A stretch of 64,000 nucleotides of DNA from Vitrella brassicaformis CCMP3155 (GCA_001179505.1 CDMY01000869.1:179452-243451), one strand, 5' to 3'; positions 1 through 44,707 are shown, counted from the first letter of the stretch. Numbers and translations: made by a program. Notes: generated from the sequence alone by a model not told the origin.

Positions 1-3000
1 GGCCTCAAGGGTGAGCCGCGTAGATCTGCACAGCATGCAGATCCTGCACGTCACTGCGGATGGGTGTGTTGTATTGTGTGGCAGAGCTGAAGGACTTCCT
101 GGACGATCCGCAGCGCATCCTGATGATTGAGCGGGCCGAGGACATGACAGACGTGTGGACAGCTGTCGGCAGATTGTGAGCCACCAACCTTACGCAGACC
201 AGACTTGGTCCCATCGCCATGGATTCGACCGTCACCTCTCTGTGTCGTGTGTGTGTGTGTGTGTGTGTTCCGCTCGCAGTCTGGTTGAGGCGATGCAGAA
301 GGAGGTGAGCTGTCGACGCACGCCACGCCCAGGGGACGGGTGGTGGTGGGGTGGGGTGGGGTGCCTGCCTGGATCTCTGTCGTTGCATGTGTTGTGCTGT
401 GTGGCAGATCAAGCGCATCCAGCACAGCAAGTCCAAGAAAGGTAAACCACGGAATGCCATGTCTGCCCCACCCACCACCTTGCTTTGCTGCACCACCTGT
501 CATATCACCTCATGTGCCTGTATATGTGTGTGTGCGCGCAGCCCCTCCCAAGTTCGACCCGAATGATGCGACGCTGTTCCATGGCATTGTGACGGTGATA
601 GAGCGGCACGGCCCCAAGCTGGTGGTGTGCGCCGACGAGTACTTCAACCACCTGTGTGAGGTGCTGAGGGACGACGGCCAGGTGTCGCCGCGGCCCGCAT
701 GGGGAGAGGCCTACCTGGGTGTGCTGCTTGCCATGGTGTCCAGACAGCAGTACACCTACAAACTCACAGAACACCACTTGAGAGGTGCAGCAGACAGTCG
801 ACCGACCCACCCACCGTGGGGAGCGGGAGGAGGTGGATCTCTATCTCGTTTTCTGTGTGTGGTGTGTTTATGACCTTCATTCAGATTTCCTGAAGGTGTT
901 GTCTGGCTTTTCGCTGACGCCGAAGCACATGTGCATGCAGACGCTCCAGATACTCTGCGCCAACGCATACGGTGGGCGACAAAGGGAAGCAGTCAGACAG
1001 ACAGTCAGACAGACAGACAGACAGGCAGGCAGGTCAGCTGTGTGGTGGGCTGTGTCGTTCCAGGTGACATCAGCCAGAAGCTGCCGACGATTGTCTCTAC
1101 TGTCTTCGACAAAATCATCCAGCTTGAGTGAGTGAGCGACTGAGTGAGTGAGCAGAGAATACGTACACACACACACAAACGTATGTGTCCATTGTGTTAC
1201 GCTGTGCTTTAAGTGAGGAGAAGGAGTTCAAGCCGAGCAATCAGTCACTCGTCGACGCCACTGTGCTCTGCGCCACCAGGTGATGCAGTGAATCAACTTT
1301 GTGTGAATCAACTGTGATGTGACTTGTTTGATTGATCTGACTCGTTCGTTCATTGTGTGTGTGTGTGCGTGCCAGTTTGGCTCTGTTGTCGCCGCTTCAG
1401 TTCCAGGACACCCTGCTGCGCAAACCCAAGATATTCGCCGCGCTCAAAATACTTGTGCGGGTACGCCAGCAAACGGCACACAGCCAATCAATTCACCGCT
1501 GCTGCATTCTCTGTTGCTGTGCTTGTGACTTGGCGCGTGTGTGCAGACATTTCGGTCTCTCAGCTCCAAATCGAAGGTCAGTCCAGAGGACAGCGAAAAT
1601 GTGTTGACTGCGTGTGTGTGTGTGTGTGTGTATGTCTTTCATCTGTGGTGTGTGTGCGCAGGAGCGTTTGATAGTGTTGCTGCGTCTGGTGGTGGTGGTG
1701 TTTAGGTCGTCAGATACGCGCCTGCCAAAAGCACTCTCCACTGGTGGGGGAGCGACAAAGACGCTGGTGGGTGCACAAACGCTGATTTGTGTCTTTGTCT
1801 GTGTGGTGCAGGTGCTCTGCGGTGGACGTTGAAGAGTCTGCTTAGCATCCTGCCGTACTACATCGAAACGCTTCTCTCAGTGGTGATGATAGGCAGGCGT
1901 ACGATGGACACACTCTCATTTCATTGGAATCTCTGCGTGTGCTACCTTGCAGAAGAGCGAGCAGAAGGGACGGCCGGACCGACAGGCACACGAATGTGGT
2001 GGGCAGTGAATGAGCCACCGTCCACTTCGTGCCGTCTTCACTTGGTGTATATGTATATGTCAGTCATCATCGCATACCAGGATCAGTTGGGCATGTCGGC
2101 CCCTTCGGACGACGCCAACCACCGGACGAGCTCATGTTTCGGCATCCGGGGCCTCAACTCGGCCGTCGAGCTGCTCACTGACATCGTGTGGGAGGTACGC
2201 ACCGACACACCATGATATCCGCACACACCTCGCCTGTGTGTGTGTGCCTGTGTGTCACACAGGCGTTCCAGCATGTGGAGTACCGTCGCATGTTTAGTGG
2301 TGATTCGGCCGCACAGGGCGGCGACACGTCATCGACACTCGCCAGTCAGGCCTCACAAATGTACCCGCCGGTCATCACACCCGAGGAGCAACGGTCGGCG
2401 CTGATGAGTACGACAGCGATCCATCTCGTGTGAGTACGTGTGTTTCTTGTACACATCTCCATCAGTGTGAAGGGCAGTGGAGAGGGCAGCGACATGCTGC
2501 GGTACTTCGAGAGGTTCCTGCACGGACCACGGGCCTCTGCATGGTACGTACGTACGTACGCAAGCACACACACCTGCTGCTGGCCGTCATGCATGTGATG
2601 ATATCAGGTGTCTGGTGCTGGCCCGTATGTGCGAGAAGGCCTGTCTGCAGCTCCCGCTGGCCGACCTGAGGGCCCTCTACCAGTTCATGACGGAGAAGCT
2701 CGAAGAAATGACACAAGCCATACTAGCGGGGTCAGTGACCGAGGGGTCAGCATGCAAAATGTGCAATCGATCGGTATCATGTTTTCTCCCCACGCCTCAC
2801 TTGCAGTGTGTTGCCGCACTCTCTCGGCATCCCTTCTCTGCGCGGCACGTCGTTCGCCCCCGACCTGTCAGACGTCTACTGCTGGCTGCTCGGGCAGACG
2901 GCCGTCCTCGAGTGCCTCTTCCTCAACCATCTGCTCGCACCACAGCGCTGCACGGCACCGACACAAGGCGACACACCCAGCACTTCAGCAGAGGATGGAG

Positions 3001-6000
3001 GGAGTGACGTACCTTCGCCGCAACACACCACCCAGTTCAACGCGGTGCCGCTGCAGATGAGTGTGCTCACCACCAACAACGCCGCCTTCTGCTCGTCGCG
3101 CGGCGGTGTGGCAGACGTGCCCGCCATCCACACGCCGTCCGAGTGGGAGGACACACTGCTCGCGAGTTTGCGGTGGCTGCTGTCGAGTCTGCCGGCACTG
3201 CTGGCGGCCCGCTACACGCGGTTCTCAGAGGCCAAGAGTGCGCTGTGCCGGCTGCTCCACCACCTGCTGGTGCTGCTCCCATCCAACAGCATCCGACAGG
3301 AGATCGCCGCATTCGCACAGCTGCGGCTATTCGACGCACAGGTGCAGCGTCATGGCTCTGGTGCGATCGCGATGGCCACACAGCCCTTCTGGCTGGCCGA
3401 GTCTTGCGTGGCCATCGCGTCTCGGCACCGCCACACTCTCCCGCCGCATGTGGTGAATCGGCTGCTGGCGTTCTCTGTGTCGATCGGCGAGAGCCTCAAG
3501 TCGCGCCACCTGGTCGTGCAGGCCGCCAGCCTGTTCAGCGCACTCCACCAGCACCAGCAACATCCCGCTGTCAACAATACACTCAAGGAGCTCCACCTCT
3601 CAGGTGAGCGATCAGACCACACCGAAAGCCCAGCCTCAGTTATATGTTCAATGTGCTGCGTGTATGTGTGTACCAAACAGCTTGTCTGCCCTCTGTCTGG
3701 CATGAGTGTCTGGAACTGGAGGTGACGGCCGAGGGCGAGGCGGGCGAGGGCAACAGTGTCGCTGGGGCCATGCTGGCCGCCACGCCAGGCGACAGTGAGG
3801 TGGTCGAGGACGCCATGCTCGCCAGAAGCGGCACTGCACTCTTGATGCGGCCCACACTCTCAGACTGGGGCATCTCCCACCCCCCGACACCCCCCGAAGC
3901 CATCGGCCCCGCCCCCCTCCCACCCCACTCGATGGCGCTCCTTCACGCGGCCGTCGCTCGCAGCGTCGACACCCTCCTCCCGTTCTTCCTCAACGAGACC
4001 GAGGATGAGGTGGTCGCCACCACACCCACACACGGCAAGTCTCGCCGTGCGGGGATGTTCTTCCAGACCGTCCACGAGACAGGGGCGGCGGCTGCGGCCG
4101 CCGCTAGTGCAGGGGCGGGAGGCACGGACGAAGCGACGCGGCGGCATCCGTTGTTGCAGTCGACAGACGGATTCTGGATGCCGAGTCTATCCAAGAGCGC
4201 CTTCCAGGCCGTCATTGGGCTGCTGAGAGTGCTCTGGCTGGCGACCAAGGTCTCGTGTCCTGCCCCAGCTGACGCGCCGGATGCGCCTGAGGTGCACGAC
4301 TGCAGCTCGCTGGACTCCGGGGTGTGGCTGGGTATCCATCTGGTGGTCTTCTGGCTGCACCGACTGCTCGAGGGCAAGACCACCAAGAGCACCAACGAGG
4401 CCACACAGAAGGAGATCCGGGCCTTCGCGTCGGCCATCTGGCTGGAGCTGGCGGAGCTGCTGGCGATCAGTGAGCGGCACGGCCTCCCCTTCTCGTGCAA
4501 TTACCCCGTCATGAACAACAAGGCCAGCAGGCGCATCGTGTCCAGCCAGACCGGCAAACCAAGATGCTCATTCGCACTCTTCCTCGACACATCCGCCGTT
4601 CTCAACGATCGCATCAACGCGGGAGGAGCTCTCGAGTCACAGGGGGGCCAGGCAGCCGGCGAGGGCACGCGGCTGCTGTCCGTGGCCACCCTCAGAGGCC
4701 GGCTGATGGCTCTGCTGCAGCGAACAGTGAACCTCAGCGTCACATCGGCTGTGGTGGCCACCAGCCCCACTGAGCCCTCTTCGTCTAATCGCAACCACCG
4801 GCGCGCGGCCCCGGCAGCAGCGGCCGCAGGTGCAGCCCGCACGCAGCAGCGAGCATCGGCGGCCCCGCAGCTGGACCCAGAAGACGATGCAGACGACTTC
4901 GGAATGCGCACACCACCCAGGCCCGGCCAGGATGGAGGCCATCAGGGTGCGGACATGGCTGATGCCTTCTTCGAGGATCAGCAGGGGGACAGAGACGGGA
5001 GGGCCCAGGGCAAGCCAACCGACATGGAGATCGAGTGGCAACTGCCGCGGCACGGCGGGCCGAAAGGCGCTACCCCTGCAGAGTCGGAGCTTCTCTCGAC
5101 CTTTCTGCCTTCTCGGGCGGCGGTGATCCGTATCCAGGTGGACCTGCTGGTCAATCCTGCACGGACTGTCGGGCCGGTGGATGAAGCCACAGACAGACTC
5201 TACAGCGGCATGCTGAAGGTGAGACTCTCACATCACGCAGGCACCCCATCAATCGCAGGGCACGCTGTCATCACGCATGTGTGCATTTCAGGCACTGGAG
5301 TCACTGGTAATGGACGAGCAAGTGGCGGATCGGCAGCAGGCTCGACGCAGCGGGGAGGAGGAGACCGCCTCAAGAATGCCCTGCGCCCAGCAGATGGGAG
5401 TCTTCGCACTGGTCGTCACCGCACTCGTGTCCAGACGCCCACCGATCCACCTGTCAGGTGCCATGACCATTGTGGGGATGCTGTGCCGGTGCGCCATTCG
5501 CCTTGCGGCCCTGAATGTGCAAATGGCGCTCATGGTGGTGTTTCCCCTCTGCCGGCTGGTGCTGTGGGCCATCGACACCAGCCGCAGCGCCGGCAAGGAG
5601 TGGGAGCTGTGCGGCGTGCTCACGCACCTCACGGGCGGCAACGACTCGCCCGCAGTGGTGTGCCGGCTGCTGAGCAGCCTGGCCAAGCGACACAAGATCT
5701 TCACTCCCCACCACCACGTTGCCTTCGGCGTCATGGCGGCGTCGACGCTCCGGTTCCTCCAGAGGTGGGCGGGCTCAGGGGTGGACTGGCCATGCGCGTA
5801 CACAAACAGACAGACACTCGTGTGTGTCTGGTCGTAGGAACAAGCATCGTGTGGCACCAGACGTGATTGAGACGCTGTGCACTATCGTGATGAACAGGGT
5901 CCCAAACCTCATTCTTGACGCCAACACCAACCCTGAAGTGAGTGAGTGAATTCAGGAGACACAGCCGACAGGGCAGGCAAGGATCGCCCTCTTCTGTGTC

Positions 6001-9000
6001 CATCCATCTGCATCTCCCATGCAGGTGCGTCTGGTTGCTGCAGCATGGTGCACTGCTCCTCTGTAAGCCATGATTGCAACGACAGAAGCCATGATTGCAA
6101 CGACAGACCTGCTGAGTGTCAATGTATCGTTTGTGCATCTCTGATCATGGGTCAGCATGGAGGTGTTTCCCGCGGCTGAGGTGTCGGAGGAGTTCAAGTC
6201 CAAGGCTCTCAAGCGCCTCGAGCAGCTGCAGGGCGGCAACAAGGAAGTGAAGATCGACCAAGACGTCAGACAGCTCCTGCACAAGCACGGCATATCGGTG
6301 GAGGCCGACGCATTCCAGGCGCTCATTTCAGCCCACCACGTGGCCGACGTCCTCTCCCTCGCTCGCGCTGGCATCGCCGCGCCCGAGATCACTGTCGACT
6401 TCCTCACATCGATATGCGCGGTGGCGAGGGAGCCATCCCTGGTCCAAGTGTGCTTCTTGGCCATCCGGCACATGGATCAGTCGCTGATGCAGGAGCAGCC
6501 GACACTGCTCGCCAGGCACATGCAGCACATCGCCGCGGGCTGGATCCGACGCAAGCTGCCTCTGGGGCAGTTTCCGACCCAGCTGTTCGATGGCGGTGCG
6601 AGTCATTCGGACTTCTTGTGGTCCAACTCGGCGATGCTGGTGAGTGCGTGCATCCTCGGCGGGCTGGAGCCCAACAAAGTCATGCCCTGCTTCCGCGAAG
6701 CACTCGGCCTCAAGAGGGTACGCCAGGCACACGCACAGAGAGAGACGGGCTCCAGCTGCATGCTGGCTTTGTGTGCGCGCTGTGTGTGGATGTCGTCAGG
6801 ACAATCAGGAGAAGGGACCCGAGCTCCGCGACGCCGTGGCGCCAGCGTTGGTGGCGATCCTGCTGATGATCAAGGGGCAGAACGGCGGTGCGTCTGAATA
6901 TCTGAAGCAGCTGCTCGGCAGCGGCAACATCATCAGTGTGCTCAAGCAGCACCTGCGGTCATCGGTGCTGTCGAGCATGCTGCGCTTCAAAGCCCAGCCC
7001 CGCGATGCCGTCGCGGCCGTCGCCTTCCCCAGCCTGCAGGCCGCCCTCTCCGAGGTCATCCCCACACCCATCGACAGCTACCCCAACCTGGACGCCTTCG
7101 TCAGTGCCAACTTCAAACACATGCTCCTCGTACTCGACAGCGCCGTCCTGCTCTCGCACGGAGACGGTGCGACCCCAGACAAGGCCGCGGCTGGCTGTTT
7201 CCAGGACTTCCTGCGCATGACGTCGTGTGTGCTCAAGCAGACGTCGCACGTCCGCCACCTCATCAACTTCCTCTTGCGACACCTCAAAAGCGCCATGGAG
7301 GCACGCGAGTCGGCGGGCGGGCGGATGGTCAAGACGGCCGGCAGCTGGCCGGATGTGCGGCAGTCCTGGATGGTGGACGGAGGGGCGCTGGCAGCCCCAG
7401 AGGAGACCAACGAGAAGTGGCAGCGGACGCTCAGCGACGAGGTGTGCCGCATTCTGAGGGAGTGCACCGACGCCATCCTCCTGCAGCTGTTCGACCGCCC
7501 TGCTCCGGGCATCATGGATCTCCTGCTCGAGCTCGTCGTCAAGAAGTACGGCGGTCTCATGGTTAGCCGGGAGGGCAGCAGCAGCAGCAGCGGAGGGGCG
7601 GACGGCAGCTGCGACGAGCCCAGCGTGACGATGGCCACCTGCCCCGTCTTCAAAATCGTCGGCGAGGCCGTCCTTCGCCTGCTGCCCCTTCGCTGCACGA
7701 GGTTCAACACGAGAGGCCGCACACAGGCGGACACGCCCAGTGTGGTTGAGGTGTTGGGACCCTCCTTCGTTCCATTCTTTGCCGCTGCAGACATCATCCC
7801 CGACACAGCAGCCGTGGCCGTCAATTCTGTCGCAGCACACTGTCTGCAGCACATCCAAGAAAGCCTCCGAGCACAAACGGATACTGCAGCGGCGCAATTA
7901 GGCAAGAGGCGACGCAGCGGCACAAAGGCAGCCGCCGCAGAGGGCGAGCCAGCGGCCAAGAAGAAGAAGCCCGCCCAAGAGGATGCGGCTCGACCGGGGG
8001 TCGAGCCAGTGCCGATGGACACCGATGATGCCGACAATGAGCCACTGTGGCCGTCTGCAGAGGCGACGGAGGCGGTGCTGGCCGCATCGGGTGGTGACGC
8101 CGTCTTGTCTCCAGAGGACCGGCTGAGGCTCTTCATGGATGAGCTCACCGACCACGACCAGCGGGCATGCGACAACCGTACTCGCATGGCCGCCGCCAAA
8201 TCGTGGGCGGACCGCCTCTCCAACAGTTTCGGCTCCGCTTTGCTCCTCCGGCGTGTGGCGGCGATATGTCTGTGGCTGAAAGGGGCCAAGGCACACGCCA
8301 GCGCCGTGAGGGCCAGTGGAGAGTCGGCCCCGGCAGGACCACGGGTGTTTGTGAGCATGGTGGTGCGGCACCTGGTCAACATCTCCAGACTCGGGACGTC
8401 GGACCATCTCCCCGAGGCGTGGAAGCTGCAGACGGCCCGGCTGCTTAGCCATGAGGGTCTGCGTGATACCAAGCTCGTGTCCGATGCTCTCCGTCAGGAC
8501 CTATCCGCCAACCTCGCCCGTGATGCCACCATGGCCTTCGACCTCGTCTGGACCTCTGAATACGGCACACCAGACCCGCGGAACCAAGCCGTGGACGGCG
8601 AACGCCCACTCATCGTGCGAGAGCTGGGCCTGGTGGTGCCCTCCGTCGCTGTGCTTGGCTTCCTCTTCGCTGTCACGTCGCTCAACCACACGGTCAAGAC
8701 TGTGCGAGAGGTGGGTTTGAGGACCCTTGAGGCGCTGGTGGGTGATCCGGTGTTCCAGCGGTGTCGGCAGTGTTTGGCGCGACAGCTGGAGGTGTCGCTG
8801 GGAGACATGACTGAGATGGCCGCTGGTGCCGCGGGAGAGGGGGAGAGGGATGGGGAGATTGACGTGTCCGCACTCAACTGGGAGGGGTGCTGGGCGCTGC
8901 CTACCGACGCAGATGGTGCCACGAAGTCGAACGAAGGTCAGAGACTCAGACATTTCTCCGAGGCAGCGTGTCGCATTGGTGGTCTTTCAGGGTACGACTC

Positions 9001-35396: not shown

Positions 35397-35765
35397 TGGC
35401 GTCCATTAAGAGATGCAATTTTTTTGACATGGGAGGGACTTCTCTTCAGCTTTTCACTGTATTGATTGTATTGCACTGTACGTATTGATGATGCCGAGGG
35501 ATAACAACAACGATGTGCGCAGATGAGAAATCCATTCAGGGAAGGGACGTTTGCAAGTGAAGTGGGATGGATGGATGGGGATGGATGGATGGATGGGCCG
35601 TTGTTCTTGTGTGACGGATACAGACAGAGAGATCCGGGGACTAAATATGGCATTGAGGAACACCATCGACTGCCGGTCTGGCTGTCTGGCCATCCATCCA
35701 TCCATCCATCCATCGATGCGTGTCGAAAATTGACACTATCATGCCAGCCAGGCCAGGCCAGCAGC

Positions 35766-35805
35766 AACACGAAAACACGAAAACACGAAAACACGAAAAC
35801 ACGAA
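35766..35805. repeat. (AACACGAA)5 octamer minisatellite between convergent genes
   Basis: Five exact copies. Confidence 0.85.
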
Positions 35806-35843
35806 AACTGACTGACCCACAGCACCACCAACAGCACCCACAC

Positions 35844-38800
35844 TCACGTCCTCCTCGCCCTTTGCCGGCTGTGATTGCGCGGCGACAGGTCCATCACAAA
35901 CGGGGTGACCACCATCTTCCCACTACTGTACAGCGCACACTGAGGGTACCCGTACCACAACATCCTCACACCCAACACAGTGCCACCTTCCCCACCCCCA
36001 CCCTCGCCCTCGCCCAGCCCCAGCCCCAGCCCGTCGAGATGCAGCTCCACCCGCCCTGCCTGGCCCTCACTATCAACAATCGTCTTGGCCAGCGGCACCC
36101 CAACCCACTCCCTCTCCCTCTCCTTTTTACCCCCTTCCGCACTCCTCTCCACTTGCACGTCGAAGAGAGTGGTCGCATTCGCGTCGTCGCAGCAGGTGCG
36201 GCAGCCCCGCGTGCCCGCCGTGTGGAGGCCGTCCCCGTGTGAGAAGGCCAGGACGATGCGGCCCCTGGCTGTTTTGGTGCCGGAGGGCACCAGGGAGGGC
36301 GGGATGGACGTGGCGGGGATGGGGATGCCGTAGACGTGTCCAGCGATCTGGGTGGCGAGCCGCTTGCCGATCTCGGCCTTGTGCCGGGGGTGGATCGGGT
36401 CAAGCGGCGAAGTGGGGTCCCCCAGATCAACCGCACTCACCATGCCTAAACGATCCACACACACAGGGAGGGAGAGGTATGTGTAGCAGCAATGGGAGGC
36501 CCGGTGCGTGTGTGCTTACCAGTGTGTGGCAGTTGCAGGGCGCTTGTCTGCTGCCACCTCATTGTCTTGAAGTCAAGGGCGGAGGGCTCCTCGTACGCCG
36601 CGAGCTGGACAAACCAGAAGGGCAGCTCGGGGGACAGCCACTGGTGCCGCACGTCAGCCACAAAGGCCGGGAAGCGACACGAGTACATTGACAAGTCGGA
36701 GGAGTCCGAGGTGTCCTGCTCGCCTTGGTACCAGATGACGCCCTTGACGTCCACTTTCTTGAGGGGGTGGAGGAGGCCATTCCATACCTGCCGAGGTCCG
36801 AGACACCATGGGCAGTGGCTGTCCCGCCGAGAGGAGCAGCCGGGCAGCCGTGGGGGGCACGCGCTGGCATTGTTGGCGGTGAAGCCATCACTGAGGCATG
36901 CCTGATGGATGCCACGAGACATAGAGAGAGAAAGGCAGATGGTTATAGGTGGGTGGTTCGCATAACATCCATCGGTGTGTGTGCTCACCTACCTGGTCAG
37001 GCCGGTCGTCACACGACGGCGTCCACCCTTGCCTCACCTTCCTCCATCCCTCACACACGCCCACCACCCCGCCCTTGGTCCTGTTGTAGGCCTCAATCGC
37101 CTCCCGGCACATCGGGTAGGCATCGAGCGCCTGCCACCACATCGCCGCACCACTCCTCTCACTCTCACCCACTGGCCGATCATTGCCGCCATCCACACGC
37201 AGCGGCCGTACAGGCGAGCCGTCCACCCCGCCACACGACAGGTCATTGATGGCTGCCGCCGACATGAAGCTCTCGATGCGCTGCCCGCCCCAGGCAGAGG
37301 TGACCAGCCCGATTGGGACGGTTGGCTCCTTCTCAGCTTGGTGGTTGAGCAGTGTGTCAAGATGTCGGCCAAAGGTATAGCAGACGGCGGAGTGGTATTT
37401 GAAGAAATGGTCGCGTGTGAGGTTGCTGTGGGTGGCTGACTCGTTTGCCGCGAAGAAGGATTGCGGGCGTGACGGTGCCCAGGCGAATGAGGCGAGGGAT
37501 GAGAGGTCTTCGCGAGGCGTGTCGGATGCGCTCAGGTTGACAGTGAACATCCGGATGTGGGGGTACCTGACACACACATACAGAGGGGGAGATGGGCTAG
37601 AATGTGCCCACTGGCGTGTCTGTCTCTTTTCCCTCCCTCACCTGTCAGCTGTTGTGATGTATTCCTGTCCTTCGAGGTCCCCATTGAGGGTCATCTGCAT
37701 GTTGGACTGCCCCGAGCACAGCCACACGTCACCGAAGACCACATCCTCCAGCAGCACGCCGCCCTCACTGGTGCTCACGCTGATCCTCCGCCCCTCAGCA
37801 CTGGCCTCCACCCGCGGCAGCAGCAGCTCCCACGCCCCAGTGTCCTCGTCGGCCCTCACATAGTAGCTAGGCGAGAACTGCTGCGGATCGCTGCCTTTGC
37901 TGGTGGATGTCTTCTGTTCGATGCGTATGGTGACGGTGACGCCCTTCTTGGCCCAGCCCCAGATGCGCGCCTGCTGTGGCGCGCGTGGGAGGACCATGTG
38001 TGAGGAGAAGATGCCATGCAGCTTGAGGTCGGGATCCTCCCTCGTGCAGTCGTGACAGAACTCCCACAGCCGCATGGGCACTGCATCGATGCTGCACACA
38101 CACACACACACAGGGAGGCTCCGCGACCATAGAGGGGCGTGTGTGTTGTCCTGTGTTGTGTTGTGCTGTGCTTTGTGTGGAGCGTACGGTTCATCGAGTC
38201 TTCGTGTGTTGTGTGGCTGGTATGAGGCGAATGTGTCGTAGAGGTTGCGGGTGAGCAGAGTGGAGGTGAAGTTGCTGAGGGCGAAGGAGCAGTCCAGCCG
38301 ACACTCAAACGTCACCTCACGACTCGCGCCAGGCAACAAATGGAACCCTGCAAAAGGAAAGAAACCCAGGACTTGTGTGTGTGCGTGGGCATTACGAGCT
38401 CTTTCCTACCATTATCTGAGAACCTTCCAGCCATCGGCGACTCCAGCCACACAAACATGGCCACCCCCCCTCCCTCTGCGGCCTTCACGCGCACCTTGGC
38501 CGCGGCCCCCTGCACGTCAATGCCCTCCACTGACACTTCCGCCCGACTCAGGTCAGCCAGCTTGTATGGACACATCACCAGATGGCCCTCGGCGTGGTGA
38601 CTGCTGCTCTTGCTGCTGGTCTGGGTCTTGCTGTCGTTGAATGAGAGCTGCATGGTGAAGAAGCAGTCGTTGGGCGAGCAGAGGAGGTGCTGCCGGAGGT
38701 CCGTGTCGGTGGTGGCATCCAGGGTGCGGCGGCGTGGTGATGGTGGGAGGCCTTTGAAGGCGCGGGAGATCTTGAACTGGTGGATGACGGCGGCCGACAG

Positions 38801-41800
38801 GGGGGCGAGGGACAACTCGCCGAGCTCCTCTCGCCACAAGACGGCCCCATCACTGCATTGTATGCACGCCATGGCAACGAATGAGTCAAACACGGTGGCC
38901 CTCAAGTACCTACCGGAATCGCACGAGCTGCACTTGTAGCGTGCCGCCGTCGAGCCGCTCGTTGATGTCTGACACGGCGTAGATCCGTGTGGTGTCCTTC
39001 CGAGGCACATACTCCCCCCGCACCATCAGGGGGCCGAAGAAGCTGCGGGCCGCATAGTGGAGGGGCTTCCACTTGCCGCTGTACTCGAGGGAGCTCCACG
39101 ACGGGCCCTGCCAGACGTCGTTGAGCTGCCAGTAGAGCACCCCCATGGTCATGACGGCCTTGTCGCTCTTGAGCCGCCGCCAGTAGCTAATGGCCGCGTC
39201 GTAGCACATACTCTGCTCCAGCTGACTCAGCCACGTCAACGACGCGAAGTCCTGCGCACCCTTGGGCAGCCGACTGAGCGCCAGCGGCTCCATCAATGCC
39301 CCTGCTAGGCCTGAAGTGATGTCTGGGGTGGTCTGGGGGCGGCCGAGGTCGGCATGGCGCAGGTACGCCTCATCCGGCACGGCTGCCGGTGCGTGCTGCG
39401 ACGGGGGGAGGCTGCACAGCACAGACACACACGCACCGAACGTTGCACATGTCGACTTCTGTGCTGTCATGACACATGACACCGCCACTGACCTGAAGTG
39501 TTTGCCAATGACTTCGATGAGCTCCCTGTTGCCGCCGGGGTGTCTCATCCTGAAAGCGCTGAAGTTTGAACTCAGCGTGAGGTCTGCCGGTTCGGCGAGG
39601 CCCGCGTAGGCCAGGATGGATGGGAGCGACTGGAAGCCGAACTCGGAGACGAACTTGGCCCTTGGGTAGTGGGAGGTCTTGAGGCAGTCGATGCCGTAGT
39701 CGTAGAAGTGCACGTCGCCCCGGTGGATGTCGTAGGGGTCGCCCCATTGCCTGTGACGGTGGAGAGGGACAATGCGCGTGTGTGTTGGCGCGTGTGTGTG
39801 TGGTTGTGGAGAGATCCACTCATCCGCTCACTTTCTGTATGTGTCAGGGTATTCGGTGAGCGGGCCGTTGGTCGGGGAGGAGTCGAGAAAGATGGCCGAC
39901 GGGGGGCCCACCTGTGCCAGCCATAGACATGCGAAACGTCTGCCGTGTGTGATGATATACATCCCAACAGCGTCTGCGCACCTTTCTGAACTCATCGTGT
40001 ATGGTGTCAATGTACAGGACGTTGTACTCGGACAAATAGAGGTCGCGATTGCTCTGCGAATCGCGGTACCTGCATTCACGCGACACAAAGCGAACGGGCC
40101 AGTCAGTACATATGCAAGGGAGCCACGTGACATCCAATGAATGGTGTCCATCCATCCCTGTGACCATTGTAGTGCAGCTTCATTCTCATTGCTCCCGCCC
40201 CAGATGACGATAGAAGGGTGGGAGGCGAGGCGACGCACCTGAATGCGCACCTGCACAGACAGCCACGAGGGAAGACACACACCGTCACAAAGGCATCCAT
40301 CGATGCACACACACAGATGGATGCGGCTGCACAACCAGCCCACCGGCCGGTTGCTGTGCTGACCTCTTGCCTGACGTTGTCGAGGAATGGTTTGTGTGTG
40401 GGGTACATGGCACAGGCGAAGATGAACTCCTGCCAGACGAGGATGCCGTGGGCGTCGCACCAGTCGTAGAAGTACTCCTCCTGGTAGATGCCCCCGCCCC
40501 ACACACGCAGCATGTTCATCTCCGCTGCCAAGGCCGACTCTGCACCCACACACAATAGATACATCACACGAAGTCACGCACACCGCCATCCACCCACCGA
40601 GGATCGCCTCCACATCTTCCTGGGTGACGGTGGCGTGGAACGACGAGAAAGGGATGACATTGGCCCCTTTGGCGTAGACGGGCACCCCGTTGACCTCGAA
40701 GTAGAAGCTCTCGGGCTTGTAGGACGTGGAGCACTCAGCGACGCTGGCGGGGCACTTGTTGCACTGTGAGAACTTGCCATGGGTTGTGTCGCAGCAGTCC
40801 GGGTGGCCGCAGTACTCGCCCAGCTCGTTGTCCCACGTCTGGCCCTCAGCCCGAACCTTGCCGTACGCCTCACAGAAAGTCAGGGACGGCTCGCGCTTCT
40901 GGTACCACTCTATGCCAGACTGAGGGGAGAGAGAGAGAGNNNNNNNNNNNNNNNNNNNNNNNNNNNNNNNNNNNNNNNNNNNNNNNNNNNNNNNNNNNNN
41001 NNNNNNNNNNNNNNNNNNNNNNNNNNNNNNNNNNNNNNNNNNNNNNNNNNNNNNNNNNNNNNNNNNNNNNNNNNNNNNNNNNNNNNNNNNNNNNNNNNNN
41101 NNNNNNNNNNNNNNNNNNNNNNNNNNNNNNNNNNNNNNNNNNNNNNNNNNNNNNNNNNNNNNNNNNNNNNNNNNNNNNNNNNNNNNNNNNNNNNNNNNNN
41201 NNNNNNNNNNNNNNNNNNNNNNNNNNNNNNNNNNNNNNNGGGAACATTCATTCATTCAGGAGCCGTGCCGCTGTTGACCCACCAAGCCTGCCTGCCTGCC
41301 TGCCCGTCTTACCCTGCAGTAAGGCCAGTTCTCGATCCTCTCCCCCTGCTTGAGGCTCGCGGCATGCGTCAGCGGCTCACGCACCAGCCGCACCCGCCGC
41401 AGCCCCACCAGGACTACCCGCCTGTCGATCGACCCGTCGTGGTCCTCACCCACATGCAGATGCAGACTGGGGGAGGACGGCACCCCCAAAGTCACGTTCA
41501 GGGGCACCAGCCTGCCCGGCGTGCCGCTGTAGCCTCGCGGCCACCATAGCGGCGGGTTTGTGACGTGGAAAGAGAAAGTGAAAGAGAGAGAGTGAAGGGG
41601 CTCGGGGGCGGAGGAGGTGGACGGGGGGGAGCGGCAATCGCCGGGAGGGATCTGCATGGATCGTTGAGTGAGACGGGAAGCAAGGAGAAGGGTGATCGGT
41701 CTGTCTCTTTTGGTGTACAGTGATGGCTGGCTGGCTGGCGCACCTTTTTGGACAGCGTCTGTCCCATGAATGTGGCGGAGAGCATGAGGTCGCCCCTCAT

Positions 41801-43362
41801 GCAGGGGTCCAGCAGCACGCCCACCTCAGACGTCACCTTGACTGCAGACAGACCGTTGCCCTCAAACACCTGGTCCGTCACCTACATACACATGTGCAGG
41901 CAACGGAAACAGACACAGGCACCGATCAGGTCAAGTCTCTCCGCCTCCCTCCCCCTTCGCCCCCACTCACCACGTGCTCAATCCTCCCCTCGCTGAGCCC
42001 CACGGCGTGCACCGACCGCCATATCCCCATGGGAGCAAAGCCAGGACCCCAATCCCACCTGCGATGCGATCCACACCGAAGCAACAAAGCCATGACACAG
42101 CCTCTGCCTCATAGCACAGGTGTGTGTGTATGTGTGTTATCCGAAGACGTACCCGAAATCTGACTGTGCCTTCCTGACGAAGTTGCGATTGGGGAGGTCG
42201 TAGAGGTTCTCCGTCACGGGAACGGGGTAGGGGAACCGGGCGGCCTCTCGCTCGCCCACATGGATAGCATTGGCGAACCGGAATGAGAGCTCGTTGCGGC
42301 CAAGCCGGAGATAGGGCTGGATCTGAGAGGGAGAAAGAACATCGGTCCTGCTGTGCTTAGTGGCCAGTTTGTCGGGCAACGACCTGGAAAGTGTATTTGA
42401 CAAACATGTTGTCCAAGGTGCCGACTTGGTGACCGTTGAGCCGCACTTGTGCGAATGTGTCGACCCCATGGAGGTCCAGCAGCACGATGCGATGACGCAG
42501 GTGGGTGCCCGTCAGCACGAAACTCGCCGTGTAGGTCCAGTTGCTCAGCGCCACCCACCGATACCGGAGCTCGTTGAAGCGATAGTACGGATGACCGTCC
42601 TGAATGAATGATCATAAACCAACGAACCAATCAATCAGACACACCACATCAATCCAATCAGAACGCGCGAATGCACGCATCCACGAACGCATCATGTTTC
42701 CTTCGCCCTTTTACCCTCTCACCTTGAGCACTCCACATGCAAGCAGGTCCTCGTAGACAGAAGAGGGTGGCGACGCCGGGCAGTCGATACGCCGATGGGG
42801 ATGGGAGGTGTCGTTGGAGCTGGTCAGCCGCCACGACACCGCTATGTGTGACATCTTGTCGTCATCGTGGGCGGCCGAGCGGTGTTGGCCGAGGGAGAGA
42901 GAGGGGTCGGCCGAGACGGGGACGCTCTCGGCCAAATGGATGACGTATGGCGCGTAGAACCTGCGTGAATGACGGACGAATGCAGCCGATTCATCAGTCA
43001 ATCAAGCAGATAGATTGCGTGTGGATGTTTACTTTGACGGCGGTATGCCTATTGCGTGTCCGGGGTCCATTCTCCACCCGATGCCCAGGAAGACAAACCC
43101 GACGGCCATCCCCACCAGCATCAGCAGAAACCCGTACTGCAATAAACAAACAGCACAAACACCAAAACAGCCCATGAGTCCATGCAGCCCGCTGGTTTGT
43201 TGATTTGTGGTTACTTACGATCAGGTAGACGCCATCCCTGCGGTTGTCCCTGTCCTTGCTGTCCCGCCTGATCTGCTGACGCTGCAGCAGATGATCGGCC
43301 TCTGCAGCATTAGTCTGACGCCCAAGGATAGTGGGACTGGCGTCATCTGCTTCGCGCTGCAT
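35844..43362 (-). CDS. Type II membrane GH2 beta-mannosidase fused to a C-terminal sialate O-acetylesterase-like (SASA/SGNH) esterase
   Basis: GH2 motifs: GVDTFA, RKAQSDFGWDWGP, FEVNGVPVYAKGANVIP, MNMLRVWGGG, WQEFIFAC, WGGSNENE (acid/base), GDVHFY, FVSEFGFQS (nucleophile), GVLYWQLNDVW, KWKPLHY, FSDNGF. Esterase motifs: IFSSHMVLPR, VFGDVWLCSGQSNMQ, PIGLVTSAWGG, GVIWYQGE, DPIHPRHK, RLA. There is no stop codon between the two. An alternative upstream start is at 43470. Confidence 0.85.
40940..41239. other. Assembly gap (300 N) inside a GH2 gene intron
   Basis: Run of N flanked by a (GA)n microsatellite. The flanking exons join in phase 0. Confidence 0.95.
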
Positions 43363-43672
43363 GCTGATGCTGTCGAGGCCCTTAGACTGTTGTGTGTCCT
43401 TATACTCCTTTCGCGCGCGAAAAAGTTCTGAAAGCGCGCAATGATTCCGTGAAACCGCTCTCTCGGGCATCGTGATGGGACAACGCAATCGTCACGCCAC
43501 TAAACAACCACCCACTGGCAGAATGAGGTATTTGCTCTCTCAAAGGGACTGAGCACTCGTGTTGACATCAAGATCTGACCGTTGATAGGTCAGCCTCTGA
43601 ATTCATCCCTTTCAGGCTGTTGATCCATTCATTCCTCTTTTGTTTGCACGCCAGAGGCTGCAGGCCAGGCTG

Positions 43673-44707
43673 ATGGGTGCTGTGTCGAGCTACATCGTCT
43701 CCAACTACCACCCCGAGTGCCCGCCGAACACACACGGCCTGGGCGACGTCGACGAGTGCCACCACACCGCTCCCGACAGAGTCTTCGCCGCGCTGGACAA
43801 GTACCTCTTCATCCGCAAAGCCAACGTCGAGGCCATCAGGAAGGGCCCCGACGAGCCGCGGCTCAGCGGGCGGCTGTTCGACTGGTGCATGACCTTCTGC
43901 CGCGACTCCCACTGCCTCCTCCCCGACCACGCCAGCGAGATGTTCAGCCAGTGCAGACAGCGGTACCACGAGAGGACCACCGGGGGTGGCGGCCTGAATG
44001 AGGACGAGAAGGAACACGAGAAGGACAAGACCTACCACAGCGGGCCCGACTACTGGTGCAGCATCGTCAAGAAGGACGGCGTGCCCTTCATTATGAATGG
44101 CGGCCGGCGTCGGTGTCCGCGGAGCTACTTCTGGTGCAGGCACCTCAAGTCGGTCAACGAGACGCAGTTCTGCCAGCGGCTGACGCGCTGCATGCACCAG
44201 TTCGACCCCAACGCTCTCGAGTACAAGAAGGTGGAGGGCCGTGCGGCCGATGCCAGGGAGGACAGCCTCGTGGGCGAGAAGAGGAAGCTCTTCAAGCTCT
44301 CCCTCCGACCCTATCGGGTGCAGTACCAGCGCTTCGAGAACCGATACCGGGAGGAGACCCACGAGGAGTGCATCAAGCTGGTGGCCTTCCTCAACGGCGA
44401 GAACCCCTTGAAGGACATGGACAAAGAACAGCAGTATCGGGTGTTCTTTGGTGAGGGCATCGACCGCAGCGAGAACCAGCAGCGGCACCTCAGCATGGCG
44501 CACTATGCCGTCTGGTGGGTCTCGCAGCAGGGCGATGAGATGCGCGCCAAGCTGAGGCGGGAGTGGGACATCCTCCGTGGGAGGGCGCGTCGCAGCAACA
44601 CGACGTGGATGGACTACATGCCGCAGAGGGAGGACTTTGCGTATGGATACGGGAGGAAGCACGGGTTCGGCACCGACATTGACAACCAGGGCCTCATAGC
44701 CAAGTAG
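43673..44707 (+). CDS. Intronless 344-aa hypothetical protein with a possible N-myristoylation motif (MGAVSS), rich in Cys and His
   Basis: Long uninterrupted ORF with strong G/C third-position bias; no recognised domain. Confidence 0.72.
   Translation: MGAVSSYIVSNYHPECPPNTHGLGDVDECHHTAPDRVFAALDKYLFIRKANVEAIRKGPDEPRLSGRLFDWCMTFCRDSHCLLPDHASEMFSQCRQRYHERTTGGGGLNEDEKEHEKDKTYHSGPDYWCSIVKKDGVPFIMNGGRRRCPRSYFWCRHLKSVNETQFCQRLTRCMHQFDPNALEYKKVEGRAADAREDSLVGEKRKLFKLSLRPYRVQYQRFENRYREETHEECIKLVAFLNGENPLKDMDKEQQYRVFFGEGIDRSENQQRHLSMAHYAVWWVSQQGDEMRAKLRREWDILRGRARRSNTTWMDYMPQREDFAYGYGRKHGFGTDIDNQGLIAK

What the first reader, a model, noticed from the sequence alone, without database searches (positions are those of the whole stretch)
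35844..43362. Apparent bifunctional GH2 beta-mannosidase / SGNH O-acetylesterase fusion gene
Seen in sequence: the last GH2 exon (FSDNG|FHLLPGASREVTF..RNLYDTF) has no stop codon. It continues through a 96-nt GT-AG intron (38092-38187, phase 2, itself stop-free and in frame) into IDAVPMRLWEFC..LKLHGIFSSHMVLPR, the start of a complete sialate-O-acetylesterase-type domain (GQSNM catalytic Ser, YQGE, DPIH). The esterase has no signal peptide of its own. Established knowledge: MANBA-type GH2 enzymes and SIAE/SASA esterases are normally separate proteins, and O-acetylation blocks exo-hydrolysis of mannans. Inference: one polypeptide may de-acetylate and then exo-hydrolyse acetylated beta-mannan or mannosylated glycans, for example in wall or cyst remodelling or prey digestion. 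I do not know of this architecture being described.
Basis: partly seen in the sequence, partly recalled or inferred. Interest (0 to 1): 0.8.

Follow-up and report, generated by a model that had tools for sequence, protein, structure and literature searches.

The report
Beta-mannosidase fused to acetylesterase, alga
The alga Vitrella brassicaformis has one 21-exon gene joining a membrane-anchored sugar-cleaving enzyme (beta-mannosidase) to an acetyl-removing enzyme; the join is real and spliced in RNA, but the protein is already in public databases and similar pairings are common in bacteria.

Summary
On the minus strand, 43362..35844, 21 exons with GT-AG introns and matching phases give 1851 codons. 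Exon by exon this equals a public Vitrella brassicaformis CCMP3155 protein, named only 'beta-mannosidase'.

The last GH2 exon has no stop. The 96-nt intron 38187-38092 is in frame and stop-free. One cDNA-like contig shows it removed exactly. The assembly gap lies inside intron 8, and the exon 8/9 join is colinear with a Vitrella paralogue.

- **N-terminal part:** a type II anchored MANBA-type GH2.
- **C-terminal part:** a mammalian-SIAE-like (CE20) esterase with Ser and His intact and no leader of its own.

Caveats:
- The two RNA-like runs hold only the esterase half plus exon 17, so a full-length mRNA is not shown.
- The closest GH2 relatives lack the esterase.
- GH-SASA fusions, including a GH2-SASA protein, are frequent in what look like bacterial proteins, and a sialidase-esterase fusion is characterised (PMC10017367).
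- The substrate, acetylated mannan or N-glycan debris, is inferred only.

Verdict: a real fusion gene, a new variant of a known kind, of moderate interest.

The parts
35844..43362 (-). Whole coding region of the fused gene. It has 21 exons: E1 43362-43219, E2 43136-43033, E3 42960-42723, E4 42599-42384, E5 42322-42153, E6 42058-41971, E7 41881-41744, E8 41651-41313, E9 40919-40598, E10 40539-40364, E11 40250-40165, E12 40069-39982, E13 39911-39832, E14 39750-39493, E15 39411-38914, E16 38852-38410, E17 38347-38188, E18 38091-37642, E19 37566-36993, E20 36901-36520, E21 36445-35844. The stop TGA is at 35846-35844.
   Evidence: GT-AG at every intron, consistent phases, no internal stop; every exon peptide is found contiguously in the public protein P0001 (1851 aa).
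43285..43302 (-). Acidic dileucine-type motif EADHLL (residues 21-26) in the 44-residue N-terminal tail. It is a possible endolysosomal sorting signal.
   Evidence: pattern [DE]xxxL[LIM] found once in the tail. Its role is inference only.
43071..43230 (-). The only hydrophobic segment of the protein (residues about 45-70, split by intron 1). It is a signal anchor preceded by a basic stretch, implying type II topology with both enzymes lumenal or extracellular.
   Evidence: Kyte-Doolittle above 1.6 only for windows 43-71. The paralogue and the Chromera relative also carry an N-terminal hydrophobic segment.
38188..42960 (-). GH2 beta-mannosidase part (residues about 84-1174, exons 3-17). It contains Glyco_hydro_2_N2, the TIM barrel and the final Ig_mannosidase domain. 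A 95-residue Cys-rich insert (residues 455-549) is shared with the paralogue and with Chromera.
   Evidence: PF22666 1.9e-49; PF17753 4.8e-15. (mouse MANBA 6ddt, 6.2e-127). (alignment).
40179..40190 (-). NENE motif (residues 666-669), which holds the GH2 acid/base glutamate.
   Evidence: Aligned to sgnNENE of mouse MANBA. N666, E667 and E669 are invariant in alignment A1.
39642..39644 (-). Glu766 in FVSEFGFQS, the GH2 nucleophile position.
   Evidence: Aligned to lvSEygyqs of 6ddt. S765, E766 and G768 are invariant in A1.
40940..41239 (.). Assembly gap (N), lying inside intron 8 (41312-40920).
   Evidence: phase 0 on both sides; the exon 8/9 join is colinear with paralogue P0267. DNA contigs end at 40939 and 41314, so the gap is not bridged.
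38092..38187 (-). Intron 17: 96 nt, GT..AG, phase 2, in frame, stop-free and CA/TG-rich. It separates the last GH2 exon from the first esterase exon.
   Evidence: X1 record 6 (186 nt) has 48 letters on 38040-38087, 4 unplaced letters (equal to 38088-38091) and 134 letters on 38188-38321. So 96 letters are removed.
38013..38213 (-). Linker of about 35 residues (1175-1209, interrupted by intron 17). It runs from the end of GH2 homology to the start of SIAE homology.
   Evidence: the Xanthomonas beta-mannosidase chain ends opposite residue about 1174. SIAE homology starts at residue 1210; pLDDT is below 50 for model residues 1-15.
35847..38012 (-). SIAE-like / CE20 SGNH acetylesterase (residues 1210-1851, exons 18-21). 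It has an N-terminal beta-sandwich, the SGNH core, a C-terminal beta domain and a 123-residue Cys-rich, partly helical insert (residues 1440-1562).
   Evidence: 8f9o, 9.7e-45. (mean pLDDT 79.8, pTM 0.81). (dog, guinea-pig and rabbit SIAE, TM by target 0.80-0.84, then CE20 esterases).
37698..37712 (-). GQSNM (residues 1310-1314), with catalytic Ser1312 at 37706-37704.
   Evidence: G, Q, S and M are invariant in 34 relatives; aligned to csGQSNMqmt of SIAE.
36713..36730 (-). Block III, YQGEQD (residues 1582-1587). The usual oxyanion-hole Asn is Asp here.
   Evidence: N in 28, D in 3 and E in 2 of 34 relatives.
36390..36401 (-). DPIH (residues 1667-1670), with catalytic His1670 at 36392-36390 and Asp at position -3.
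   Evidence: H in 33 of 34 relatives; aligned to gsIHPrdk of SIAE.

Best explanation
This is one nuclear gene of Vitrella brassicaformis. It encodes an 1851-residue type II membrane protein.

**Architecture.** A short cytosolic tail and one signal-anchor helix carry two catalytic units into the secretory or endolysosomal lumen, or onto the cell surface. The first unit is a MANBA-type GH2 exo-beta-mannosidase. After a flexible linker of about 35 residues comes the second, a SIAE-like (CAZy CE20, Pfam SASA) SGNH O-acetylesterase.

**Origin (inferred).** A chrompodellid membrane-anchored beta-mannosidase paralogue lost the stop of its terminal exon, now exon 17. That exon gained a donor site that splices in frame to an algal SIAE-type esterase gene lacking its own leader.

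**Mechanism (inferred).** The esterase strips O-acetyl groups that block exo-glycosidases. The tethered GH2 then removes terminal beta-linked mannose. Candidate substrates are acetylated beta-mannosides or mannans, or N-glycan remnants (Man-beta-1,4-GlcNAc) together with O-acetylated sugars in a digestive compartment.

**Shown:** the continuous frame, the splice at the junction, intact catalytic motifs and the single anchor. **Inferred:** full-length mRNA and protein, localisation and substrates.
For: **Gene model**
- 21 exons, all GT-AG, consistent phases, 1851 codons.
- Identical exon by exon to the public protein P0001.

**The junction**
- The frame stays open across it, with or without the intron.
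- A contig of run X1 joins 38091 to 38188.
- X1 also removes introns 36446-36519, 36902-36992 and 37567-37641, whereas DNA runs X3 and X4 carry unspliced 5.17-kb contigs with no differences. This shows X1 is cDNA-like and that there is no misassembly at the junction.

**Exon 17 belongs to the GH2 protein**
- It encodes the conserved second half of the Ig_mannosidase domain.
- It is homologous to the terminal coding exon of the stand-alone paralogue. Both have a preceding 62-nt intron at the same codon (SDN|G/D|FH). The paralogue ends in TGA 17 residues later.
- So a protein using exon 17 reads on into the esterase.

**The esterase needs the GH2 anchor**
- It has no leader. SIAE homology starts at mature residue 18.
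- It carries 16 Cys and 7 sequons, which is typical of lumenal proteins. The only hydrophobic segment of the whole protein is at residues 45-70.

**Catalytic residues and fold**
- NENE and SEFGFQS align to mouse MANBA.
- GQSNM, GG and His are conserved.
- The esterase model has pTM 0.81 and matches mammalian SIAE with TM 0.80-0.84.

**Other support**
- This is the only SASA locus found in the 72.7-Mb genome.
- There is precedent for esterase-glycosidase tandem enzymes: SiaBb1 (PMC10017367) and many GH+SASA proteins.
Against: - The two RNA-like runs (X1, X2) have contigs only from 36116 to 38321, that is the esterase half plus 134 nt of exon 17. Nothing lies on exons 9-16. The word share of 0.34 agrees with this. 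An esterase-dominant shorter transcript is therefore possible.
- Contigs cannot show RNA ends, and no run is on record as RNA.
- Block III Asn is Asp, which might lower esterase activity.
- No orthologue with the same fusion was found. The Vitrella paralogue, Chromera, green algae and animals have GH2 alone. Metagenome loci matched only the esterase part. So the architecture has no support from conservation.
- Function and localisation are entirely inferred.
Confidence: 0.7

Rival explanations
1. There are two overlapping expression units. An internal promoter in or just upstream of exon 17 makes an esterase-only mRNA that is the main product. The GH2 part is silent or expressed separately, and the fused protein is rare or absent.
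For: X1 and X2 contigs cover 36116-38321 only, at depth about 6-9, with nothing on about 2 kb of upstream exons. In X2, short imperfect matches at 39192-39224 and 40483-40517 (2-3 mismatches) come from 329- and 738-nt contigs. These probably belong to the paralogue, so other GH2 mRNA was assembled in that run.
Against: - Such an mRNA would carry conserved GH2 coding sequence as its 5' leader.
- Its first AUG (38194-38192) is out of frame and opens an overlapping reading frame of about 100 codons (read).
- The first in-frame Met (residue 1189) gives an esterase without any signal peptide, although it is Cys- and sequon-rich.
- The GH2 frame would have no stop at all.
- Low depth and possible 3' bias on a roughly 6-kb mRNA could give the same picture. 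The tool itself warns that a hole proves nothing.
Confidence: 0.2
2. The fusion is a gene-prediction or assembly artefact. Two adjacent genes were wrongly merged, or a stop-carrying exon is hidden.
For: An assembly gap lies in the locus. The public model is an automatic prediction.
Against: - The gap is 2.7 kb upstream of the junction, inside an intron. The exon 8/9 join is colinear with the paralogue.
- Two DNA runs from different studies have contigs spanning 35800-40939 with no differences.
- The intron between the halves is only 96 nt and is seen spliced out directly, exon 17 to exon 18. No exon can hide there.
- There is no in-frame stop, spliced or unspliced.
Confidence: 0.03
3. The fusion protein is made, but the esterase half is catalytically weak or dead. 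It would serve as a carbohydrate-binding or targeting module for the mannosidase.
For: The oxyanion-hole Asn of block III is Asp. There is a large lineage-specific 123-residue insert next to the core, with pLDDT 40-79.
Against: Ser, the Gly-Gly and His are all conserved. D or E at this position occurs in 5 of 34 relatives. In the related CE6 family the Asn can be functionally replaced by Gln (PMC12247016). The core is modelled with pLDDT above 90.
Confidence: 0.1

Closest known systems
Animal lysosomal beta-mannosidase MANBA (GH2; mouse structure 6ddt)
   Same: It shares the N-terminal beta-sandwiches, the TIM barrel with NENE and SE(F/Y)G(F/Y)QS glutamates, and the C-terminal Ig-fold domain. 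E = 6.2e-127 over three blocks, and Pfam PF22666 plus PF17753 match.
   Different: MANBA is a soluble lysosomal enzyme of about 880 aa with a cleaved signal peptide. Here there is an uncleaved-type N-terminal anchor with a cytosolic tail, a 95-residue Cys-rich insert before the barrel, other inserts, and a 640-residue esterase appended.
Vitrella paralogue CEM13540.1 / A0A0G4FIN5 (P0389, 1292 aa) and Chromera velia A0A0G4GYN0 (P0268, 1647 aa)
   Same: Both have the same anchored GH2 design and the same Cys-rich insert. Identity is 43% and 39%. The paralogue shares the position and the 62-nt length of the last intron.
   Different: Both stop after the Ig domain or an unrelated tail. Neither has a SASA domain. 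The Chromera tail shows no similarity to the esterase.
Mammalian sialate O-acetylesterase SIAE (dog, guinea-pig and rabbit structures 8f9o-8f9r); CAZy CE20 acetylesterases (XAC1771 7kmm, PpCE20_II 9ega, FI8 9h4u)
   Same: The same three-part fold. Sequence E = 9.7e-45. TM by target is 0.80-0.89. The GQSNM Ser and the IHP His are conserved.
   Different: It has no signal peptide of its own and is fused behind a GH2. It carries a 123-residue Cys-rich insert between blocks II and III. Block III Asn is Asp. Substrate is unknown, since CE20 members are not all sialate-specific by their entry titles.
Tandem SIAE-like proteins of unnamed algae or metagenomes (P0152 1134 aa, P0003 1933 aa, P0151 1809 aa)
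   Same: These are the closest esterase sequences, at 33-43% identity with the same motifs. The P0152 contig carries PsbQ and SPRY genes, so it is probably a eukaryotic alga.
   Different: They repeat the esterase 2-4 times and have no GH2.
Multi-catalytic GH+SASA proteins, probably bacterial, and the characterised sialidase/O-acetylesterase SiaBb1 of Bifidobacterium bifidum
   Same: One polypeptide holds an exo-glycosidase and a SASA esterase. Examples are P0196 GH2(N, middle, TIM)+SASA, P0175 GH67+SASA, P0241 SASA+GH97, and BNR sialidase+SASA. SiaBb1 is listed as an O-acetylesterase/sialidase fusion in PMC10017367.
   Different: None of those listed has the mannosidase-type GH2 (PF17753). 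None is known to be eukaryotic or type II anchored.

Membership tests
GH2 beta-mannosidase (MANBA type) | GH2 N-terminal galactose-binding-like domain | tested here: met
   PF22666 at 1.9e-49, residues 126-305, full profile 1-167.
GH2 beta-mannosidase (MANBA type) | TIM barrel with an acid/base Glu (NENE) and a nucleophile Glu (SExGxQS) | tested here: met
   Residues 666-669 and Glu766 align to the same motifs of mouse MANBA 6ddt and are invariant in A1.
GH2 beta-mannosidase (MANBA type) | C-terminal Ig-fold mannosidase domain | tested here: met
   PF17753 at 4.8e-15, residues 1096-1168, profile 11-81 of 81.
GH2 beta-mannosidase (MANBA type) | Exo-beta-mannosidase activity | not testable with these tools
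   Needs an enzyme assay.
SIAE / SASA (PF03629) / CE20 SGNH acetylesterase | Block I, GQSNM, with the catalytic Ser | tested here: met
   Residues 1310-1314; invariant in 34 relatives.
SIAE / SASA (PF03629) / CE20 SGNH acetylesterase | Block II Gly and block V His | tested here: met
   G1426/G1427 are conserved in 30-31 of 34 relatives. H1670 is conserved in 33 of 34.
SIAE / SASA (PF03629) / CE20 SGNH acetylesterase | Block III oxyanion-hole Asn | tested here: not met
   Asp1587 replaces Asn. The position is N in 28, D in 3 and E in 2 of 34 relatives. This is a minority variant whose effect is unknown.
SIAE / SASA (PF03629) / CE20 SGNH acetylesterase | Overall three-domain SIAE fold | tested here: met
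   AF2 model with pTM 0.81. Foldseek to 8f9p gives E = 3.8e-41 and TM by target 0.84. PF03629 scores 4.5e-21.
SIAE / SASA (PF03629) / CE20 SGNH acetylesterase | Its own N-terminal signal peptide, as in stand-alone SIAE | tested here: not met
   Homology begins at mature residue 18, directly after the GH2 linker. There is no hydrophobic segment outside residues 45-70.
Bifunctional glycosidase-acetylesterase fusion enzymes | Both catalytic modules in one reading frame of one gene | tested here: met
Bifunctional glycosidase-acetylesterase fusion enzymes | One mRNA or protein carrying both modules | tested here: inconclusive
   The exon 17-exon 18 splice is seen in a cDNA-like contig. No RNA contig lies on exons 9-16. 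The protein search with the junction fragment was blank.
Bifunctional glycosidase-acetylesterase fusion enzymes | Both activities demonstrated | not testable with these tools
   Needs recombinant enzyme assays.

The most novel reading that the evidence does not exclude
Vitrella makes a full-length 200-kDa membrane-anchored enzyme that would be the first eukaryotic fusion of a MANBA-type beta-mannosidase with a SIAE-type O-acetylesterase. The two animal lysosomal glycan-catabolic activities would be physically coupled and act in sequence on O-acetylated beta-mannosides or glycoprotein glycans, in a digestive vacuole or during wall turnover. It may coexist with an esterase-only isoform from an internal start, which would explain the uneven RNA coverage.
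Probability: 0.45. Interest if true: 0.5.

Novelty: new variant of a known kind. Interest (0 to 1): 0.4.

Why it matters
If the fused protein is made, it is a natural 'Rosetta stone' link between de-O-acetylation and beta-mannoside hydrolysis in a relative of apicomplexan parasites.

It would point to O-acetylated mannose-containing glycans, or SIAE-type substrates, in chromerid walls or vacuoles.

It would also give a ready-made two-activity enzyme for acetylated mannan processing.

The locus shows a clean route of gene fusion. The terminal exon of a paralogue lost its stop and gained a donor site.

The wider impact is limited. GH-esterase fusions are a familiar CAZyme theme, the protein is already deposited, and no orthologue conserves the fusion.

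Tried and rejected
**Joined protein.** I did not build or search a joined spliced protein myself. Exons were searched by reference, and the full-length protein used was the public entry P0001 returned.

**Fused relatives: none found**
- The exhaustive HMMER search with the junction ORF listed 150 of 6655 hits. Only the window's own protein is GH2+SASA. The other 15 long hits scanned are SASA-only or SASA plus other domains.
- The word search with the esterase region among proteins of 1018-3239 aa found no PF17753+PF03629 protein among 120 of 222 hits.
- The word search with the GH2 part found no SASA in 120 listed hits.
- A scan of JGI metagenome contigs with residues 1000-1400 gave 80 loci, essentially all matching only from about query position 195 onward (protein residue about 1195), which is the esterase part.

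**Other blanks**
- A protein search with residues 1060-1260, meant to catch transcript-derived fragments across exons 16-18, was blank.
- The Chromera C-terminal extension compared with the esterase showed no similarity.
- DNA contigs did not bridge the N gap.
- No run is on record as RNA. The read tools are capped at one call each, so coverage of exons 1-8 by RNA was not examined.
- Papers holding both 'Vitrella' and 'mannosidase': two, and neither title or abstract concerns this gene; I did not read them.

**Weak argument.** The stop-free state of the 96-nt intron is by itself no more than chance would often give.


Full report
**Observation**

The gene lies on the minus strand. The region 38348..37640 translates as one open frame. 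It runs from the end of a beta-mannosidase Ig domain (GFHLLPGASREVTF...RNLYDTF), through the 96 nt at 38187-38092, into IDAVPMRLWEFC...LKLHGIFSSHMVLPR...GQSNM. The 96 nt start with GT, end with AG, hold 32 codons in frame and contain no stop.

A coordinate-only script defined 21 exons from the ATG at 43362 to the TGA at 35846-35844. Every intron is GT-AG (58-123 nt, plus the gap-containing one). Every phase matches, and the sum is 5556 nt, or 1851 codons.

Exon peptides were searched one at a time by reference.

The exhaustive protein search with the continuous junction ORF returned a public protein, P0001, of exactly 1851 residues. Each of the 21 exon peptides sits in it contiguously. Its sources name it 'unnamed protein product [Vitrella brassicaformis CCMP3155]' and, in UniRef, 'beta-mannosidase'. 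The genome size of 72.7 Mb in 1064 contigs fits that species, from my own knowledge of the genome.

**The assembly gap**

The N run at 40940-41239 lies inside intron 8 (41312-40920). Exon 8 ends and exon 9 begins in phase 0. The join ...ENWPYCR|SGIEWYQKREPS... aligns residue for residue, without an indel, to P0267.

P0267 clusters at 90% identity or more with the Vitrella paralogue CEM13540.1 (P0389, 1292 aa). The Chromera relative is colinear apart from an insertion of its own.

So the coding sequence appears continuous across the gap. The gap itself is not bridged, because DNA contigs of runs X3 and X4 stop at 40939 and 41314.

**What the two halves are**

*GH2 half*
- The whole protein hits Pfam Glyco_hydro_2_N2 (1.9e-49) and Ig_mannosidase (4.8e-15, residues 1096-1168, reaching the last profile position).
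- It matches mouse lysosomal beta-mannosidase 6ddt at 6.2e-127. The NENE and SE(F/Y)G(F/Y)QS catalytic motifs are aligned.
- A Xanthomonas beta-mannosidase chain ends opposite residue about 1174. The GH2 protein is therefore complete there.

*Esterase half*
- Its homology to dog SIAE (8f9o, 9.7e-45) begins at residue 1210, which is residue 18 of the mature chain, and runs to the C terminus.
- An AlphaFold2 model of residues 1184-1851 has mean pLDDT 79.8 and pTM 0.81.
- In that model the linker is disordered, and the 123-residue Cys-rich insert is a moderately confident helical sub-domain.
- Its best structural matches are dog, guinea-pig and rabbit SIAE (TM by target 0.80-0.84). CE20 acetylesterases follow: XAC1771, PpCE20_II and FI8.
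- In an alignment with 34 single-domain relatives, GQSNM, the block II glycines and the block V His are conserved.
- The block III Asn is Asp, as in 3 of the 34 relatives.

*Topology*
- The protein has a single hydrophobic segment (residues about 45-70), after a 44-residue tail that contains EADHLL.
- The lumenal parts carry 13 sequons and many cysteines.
- I infer a type II anchored protein with both enzymes outside the cytosol. The esterase would depend on the GH2 anchor for entry into the secretory pathway.

**Is the fusion transcribed?**

No sequencing run is on record as RNA. Run X1 nevertheless contains contigs in which four introns of this gene are removed exactly: 36446-36519, 36902-36992, 37567-37641 and 38092-38187. 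The DNA runs X3 and X4, from two other studies, carry unspliced contigs of 5.17 kb spanning 35800-40939 with no differences. X1 therefore behaves as cDNA, and the junction is not a misassembly.

The key record is number 6, 186 nt long:
- letters 1-48 lie on 38040-38087;
- letters 53-186 lie on 38188-38321;
- the four letters between them correspond in number to 38088-38091, which the aligner skipped as a repeat.

The limit is clear. X1 and X2 have contigs only between 36116 and 38321, and none on exons 9-16. The index share of 0.34 agrees. Contigs cannot show RNA ends, and depth is low, so full-length co-transcription is not shown. An esterase-rich shorter RNA cannot be excluded.

Four points argue against a functional esterase-only mRNA:
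- Exon 17 encodes the conserved second half of the GH2 Ig domain.
- Exon 17 is homologous to the terminal coding exon of the paralogue. Both have a preceding 62-nt intron at the same codon, and the paralogue then ends with TGA.
- The first AUG downstream of 38321 is out of frame (read).
- The first in-frame Met would give a leaderless esterase.

In addition, the GH2 frame has no stop, spliced or unspliced.

**Relatives and novelty**

The closest GH2 relatives all lack SASA. They are the Vitrella paralogue (43% identity), the Chromera velia protein A0A0G4GYN0 (39%), and green-algal and animal MANBA. The Chromera C-terminal tail is unrelated to the esterase.

The closest esterase relatives are proteins with 2-4 tandem SIAE-like units on metagenome contigs. 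One such contig also carries PsbQ and SPRY genes, so it is probably from a eukaryotic alga.

This locus is the only SASA match found in the genome. Metagenome contigs matched only the esterase part.

SASA is widely fused to glycosidases elsewhere. Examples are a GH2 (N, middle, TIM barrel) plus SASA protein, GH67+SASA, SASA+GH97, and sialidase+SASA. A sialidase/O-acetylesterase fusion of Bifidobacterium bifidum is characterised (PMC10017367). A survey of GH2 architectures explicitly set aside hybrid enzymes with further catalytic modules (PMC5145203).

The general design is therefore known. The specific pairing of a MANBA-type GH2 with a SIAE-type esterase in a eukaryote was found only here, within the limits of the lists I could see. 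The protein is deposited, but I found no paper that discusses it. Only two papers hold both 'Vitrella' and 'mannosidase', and neither title or abstract concerns this gene; I did not read them.

**Mechanism**

*Shown:* one frame, the splice, intact motifs and one anchor.

*Inferred:*
- The esterase removes O-acetyl groups that block exo-glycosidases, and the tethered GH2 removes terminal beta-mannose.
- Equally possible is a lysosome-like role in glycoprotein glycan breakdown. The nearest characterised relatives of both halves are animal lysosomal enzymes, and the tail has a dileucine-type motif.
- CE20 members are not all sialate-specific by their entry titles, so the substrate cannot be read from the family name.

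**Verdict**

This is a real fusion gene with the junction splice confirmed. Full-length expression and function remain open. It is a new variant of a known kind, of moderate interest.

Noticed in passing
window 43468-43470 (minus strand): An in-frame ATG lies 36 codons upstream of the annotated start (MPERAVSRNHCALSELF...), with no stop between them. The cytosolic tail could be 36 residues longer than in the public model.
   Followed up: no
window 38139-38180 (inside intron 17): A CA/TG-rich stretch of about 40 nt matches many other contigs of the DNA runs. Depth jumps from about 22 to 266 in X3. It is therefore a short dispersed repeat or microsatellite sitting in the fusion intron.
   Followed up: partly
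window 35564-35808: The 3' flank of the gene holds tandem repeats: (AACACGAA) x5.4 at 35766-35808, directly after the stop, and (GGAT)n / (CCAT)n at 35565-35596 and 35690-35714.
   Followed up: no
L090 (G000:C447:50000-59999), about 1992-7156: This is the stand-alone paralogous beta-mannosidase (CEM13540.1, 1292 aa). It has the same anchor, the same Cys-rich insert, and a last intron at the same position with the same 62-nt length. It ends with TGA after ...QSPPPHIS.
   Followed up: partly
window 39192-39224 and 40483-40517: Run X2 has 329- and 738-nt contigs that match only these conserved GH2 motifs, with 2-3 mismatches. They are probably transcripts of the paralogue, which would mean the paralogue is better expressed than the GH2 half of the fused gene in that sample.
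   Followed up: no
window 43640-44707 (+ strand): A 355-codon open frame starts about 280 nt from the fused gene's ATG on the other strand. It may be a divergent neighbour sharing the promoter region. It was not identified.
   Followed up: no
P0268 (Chromera velia A0A0G4GYN0), residues about 1380-1647: The Chromera relative has an extension of about 270 residues after its Ig domain. The extension has no Pfam match and no similarity to the Vitrella esterase.
   Followed up: partly
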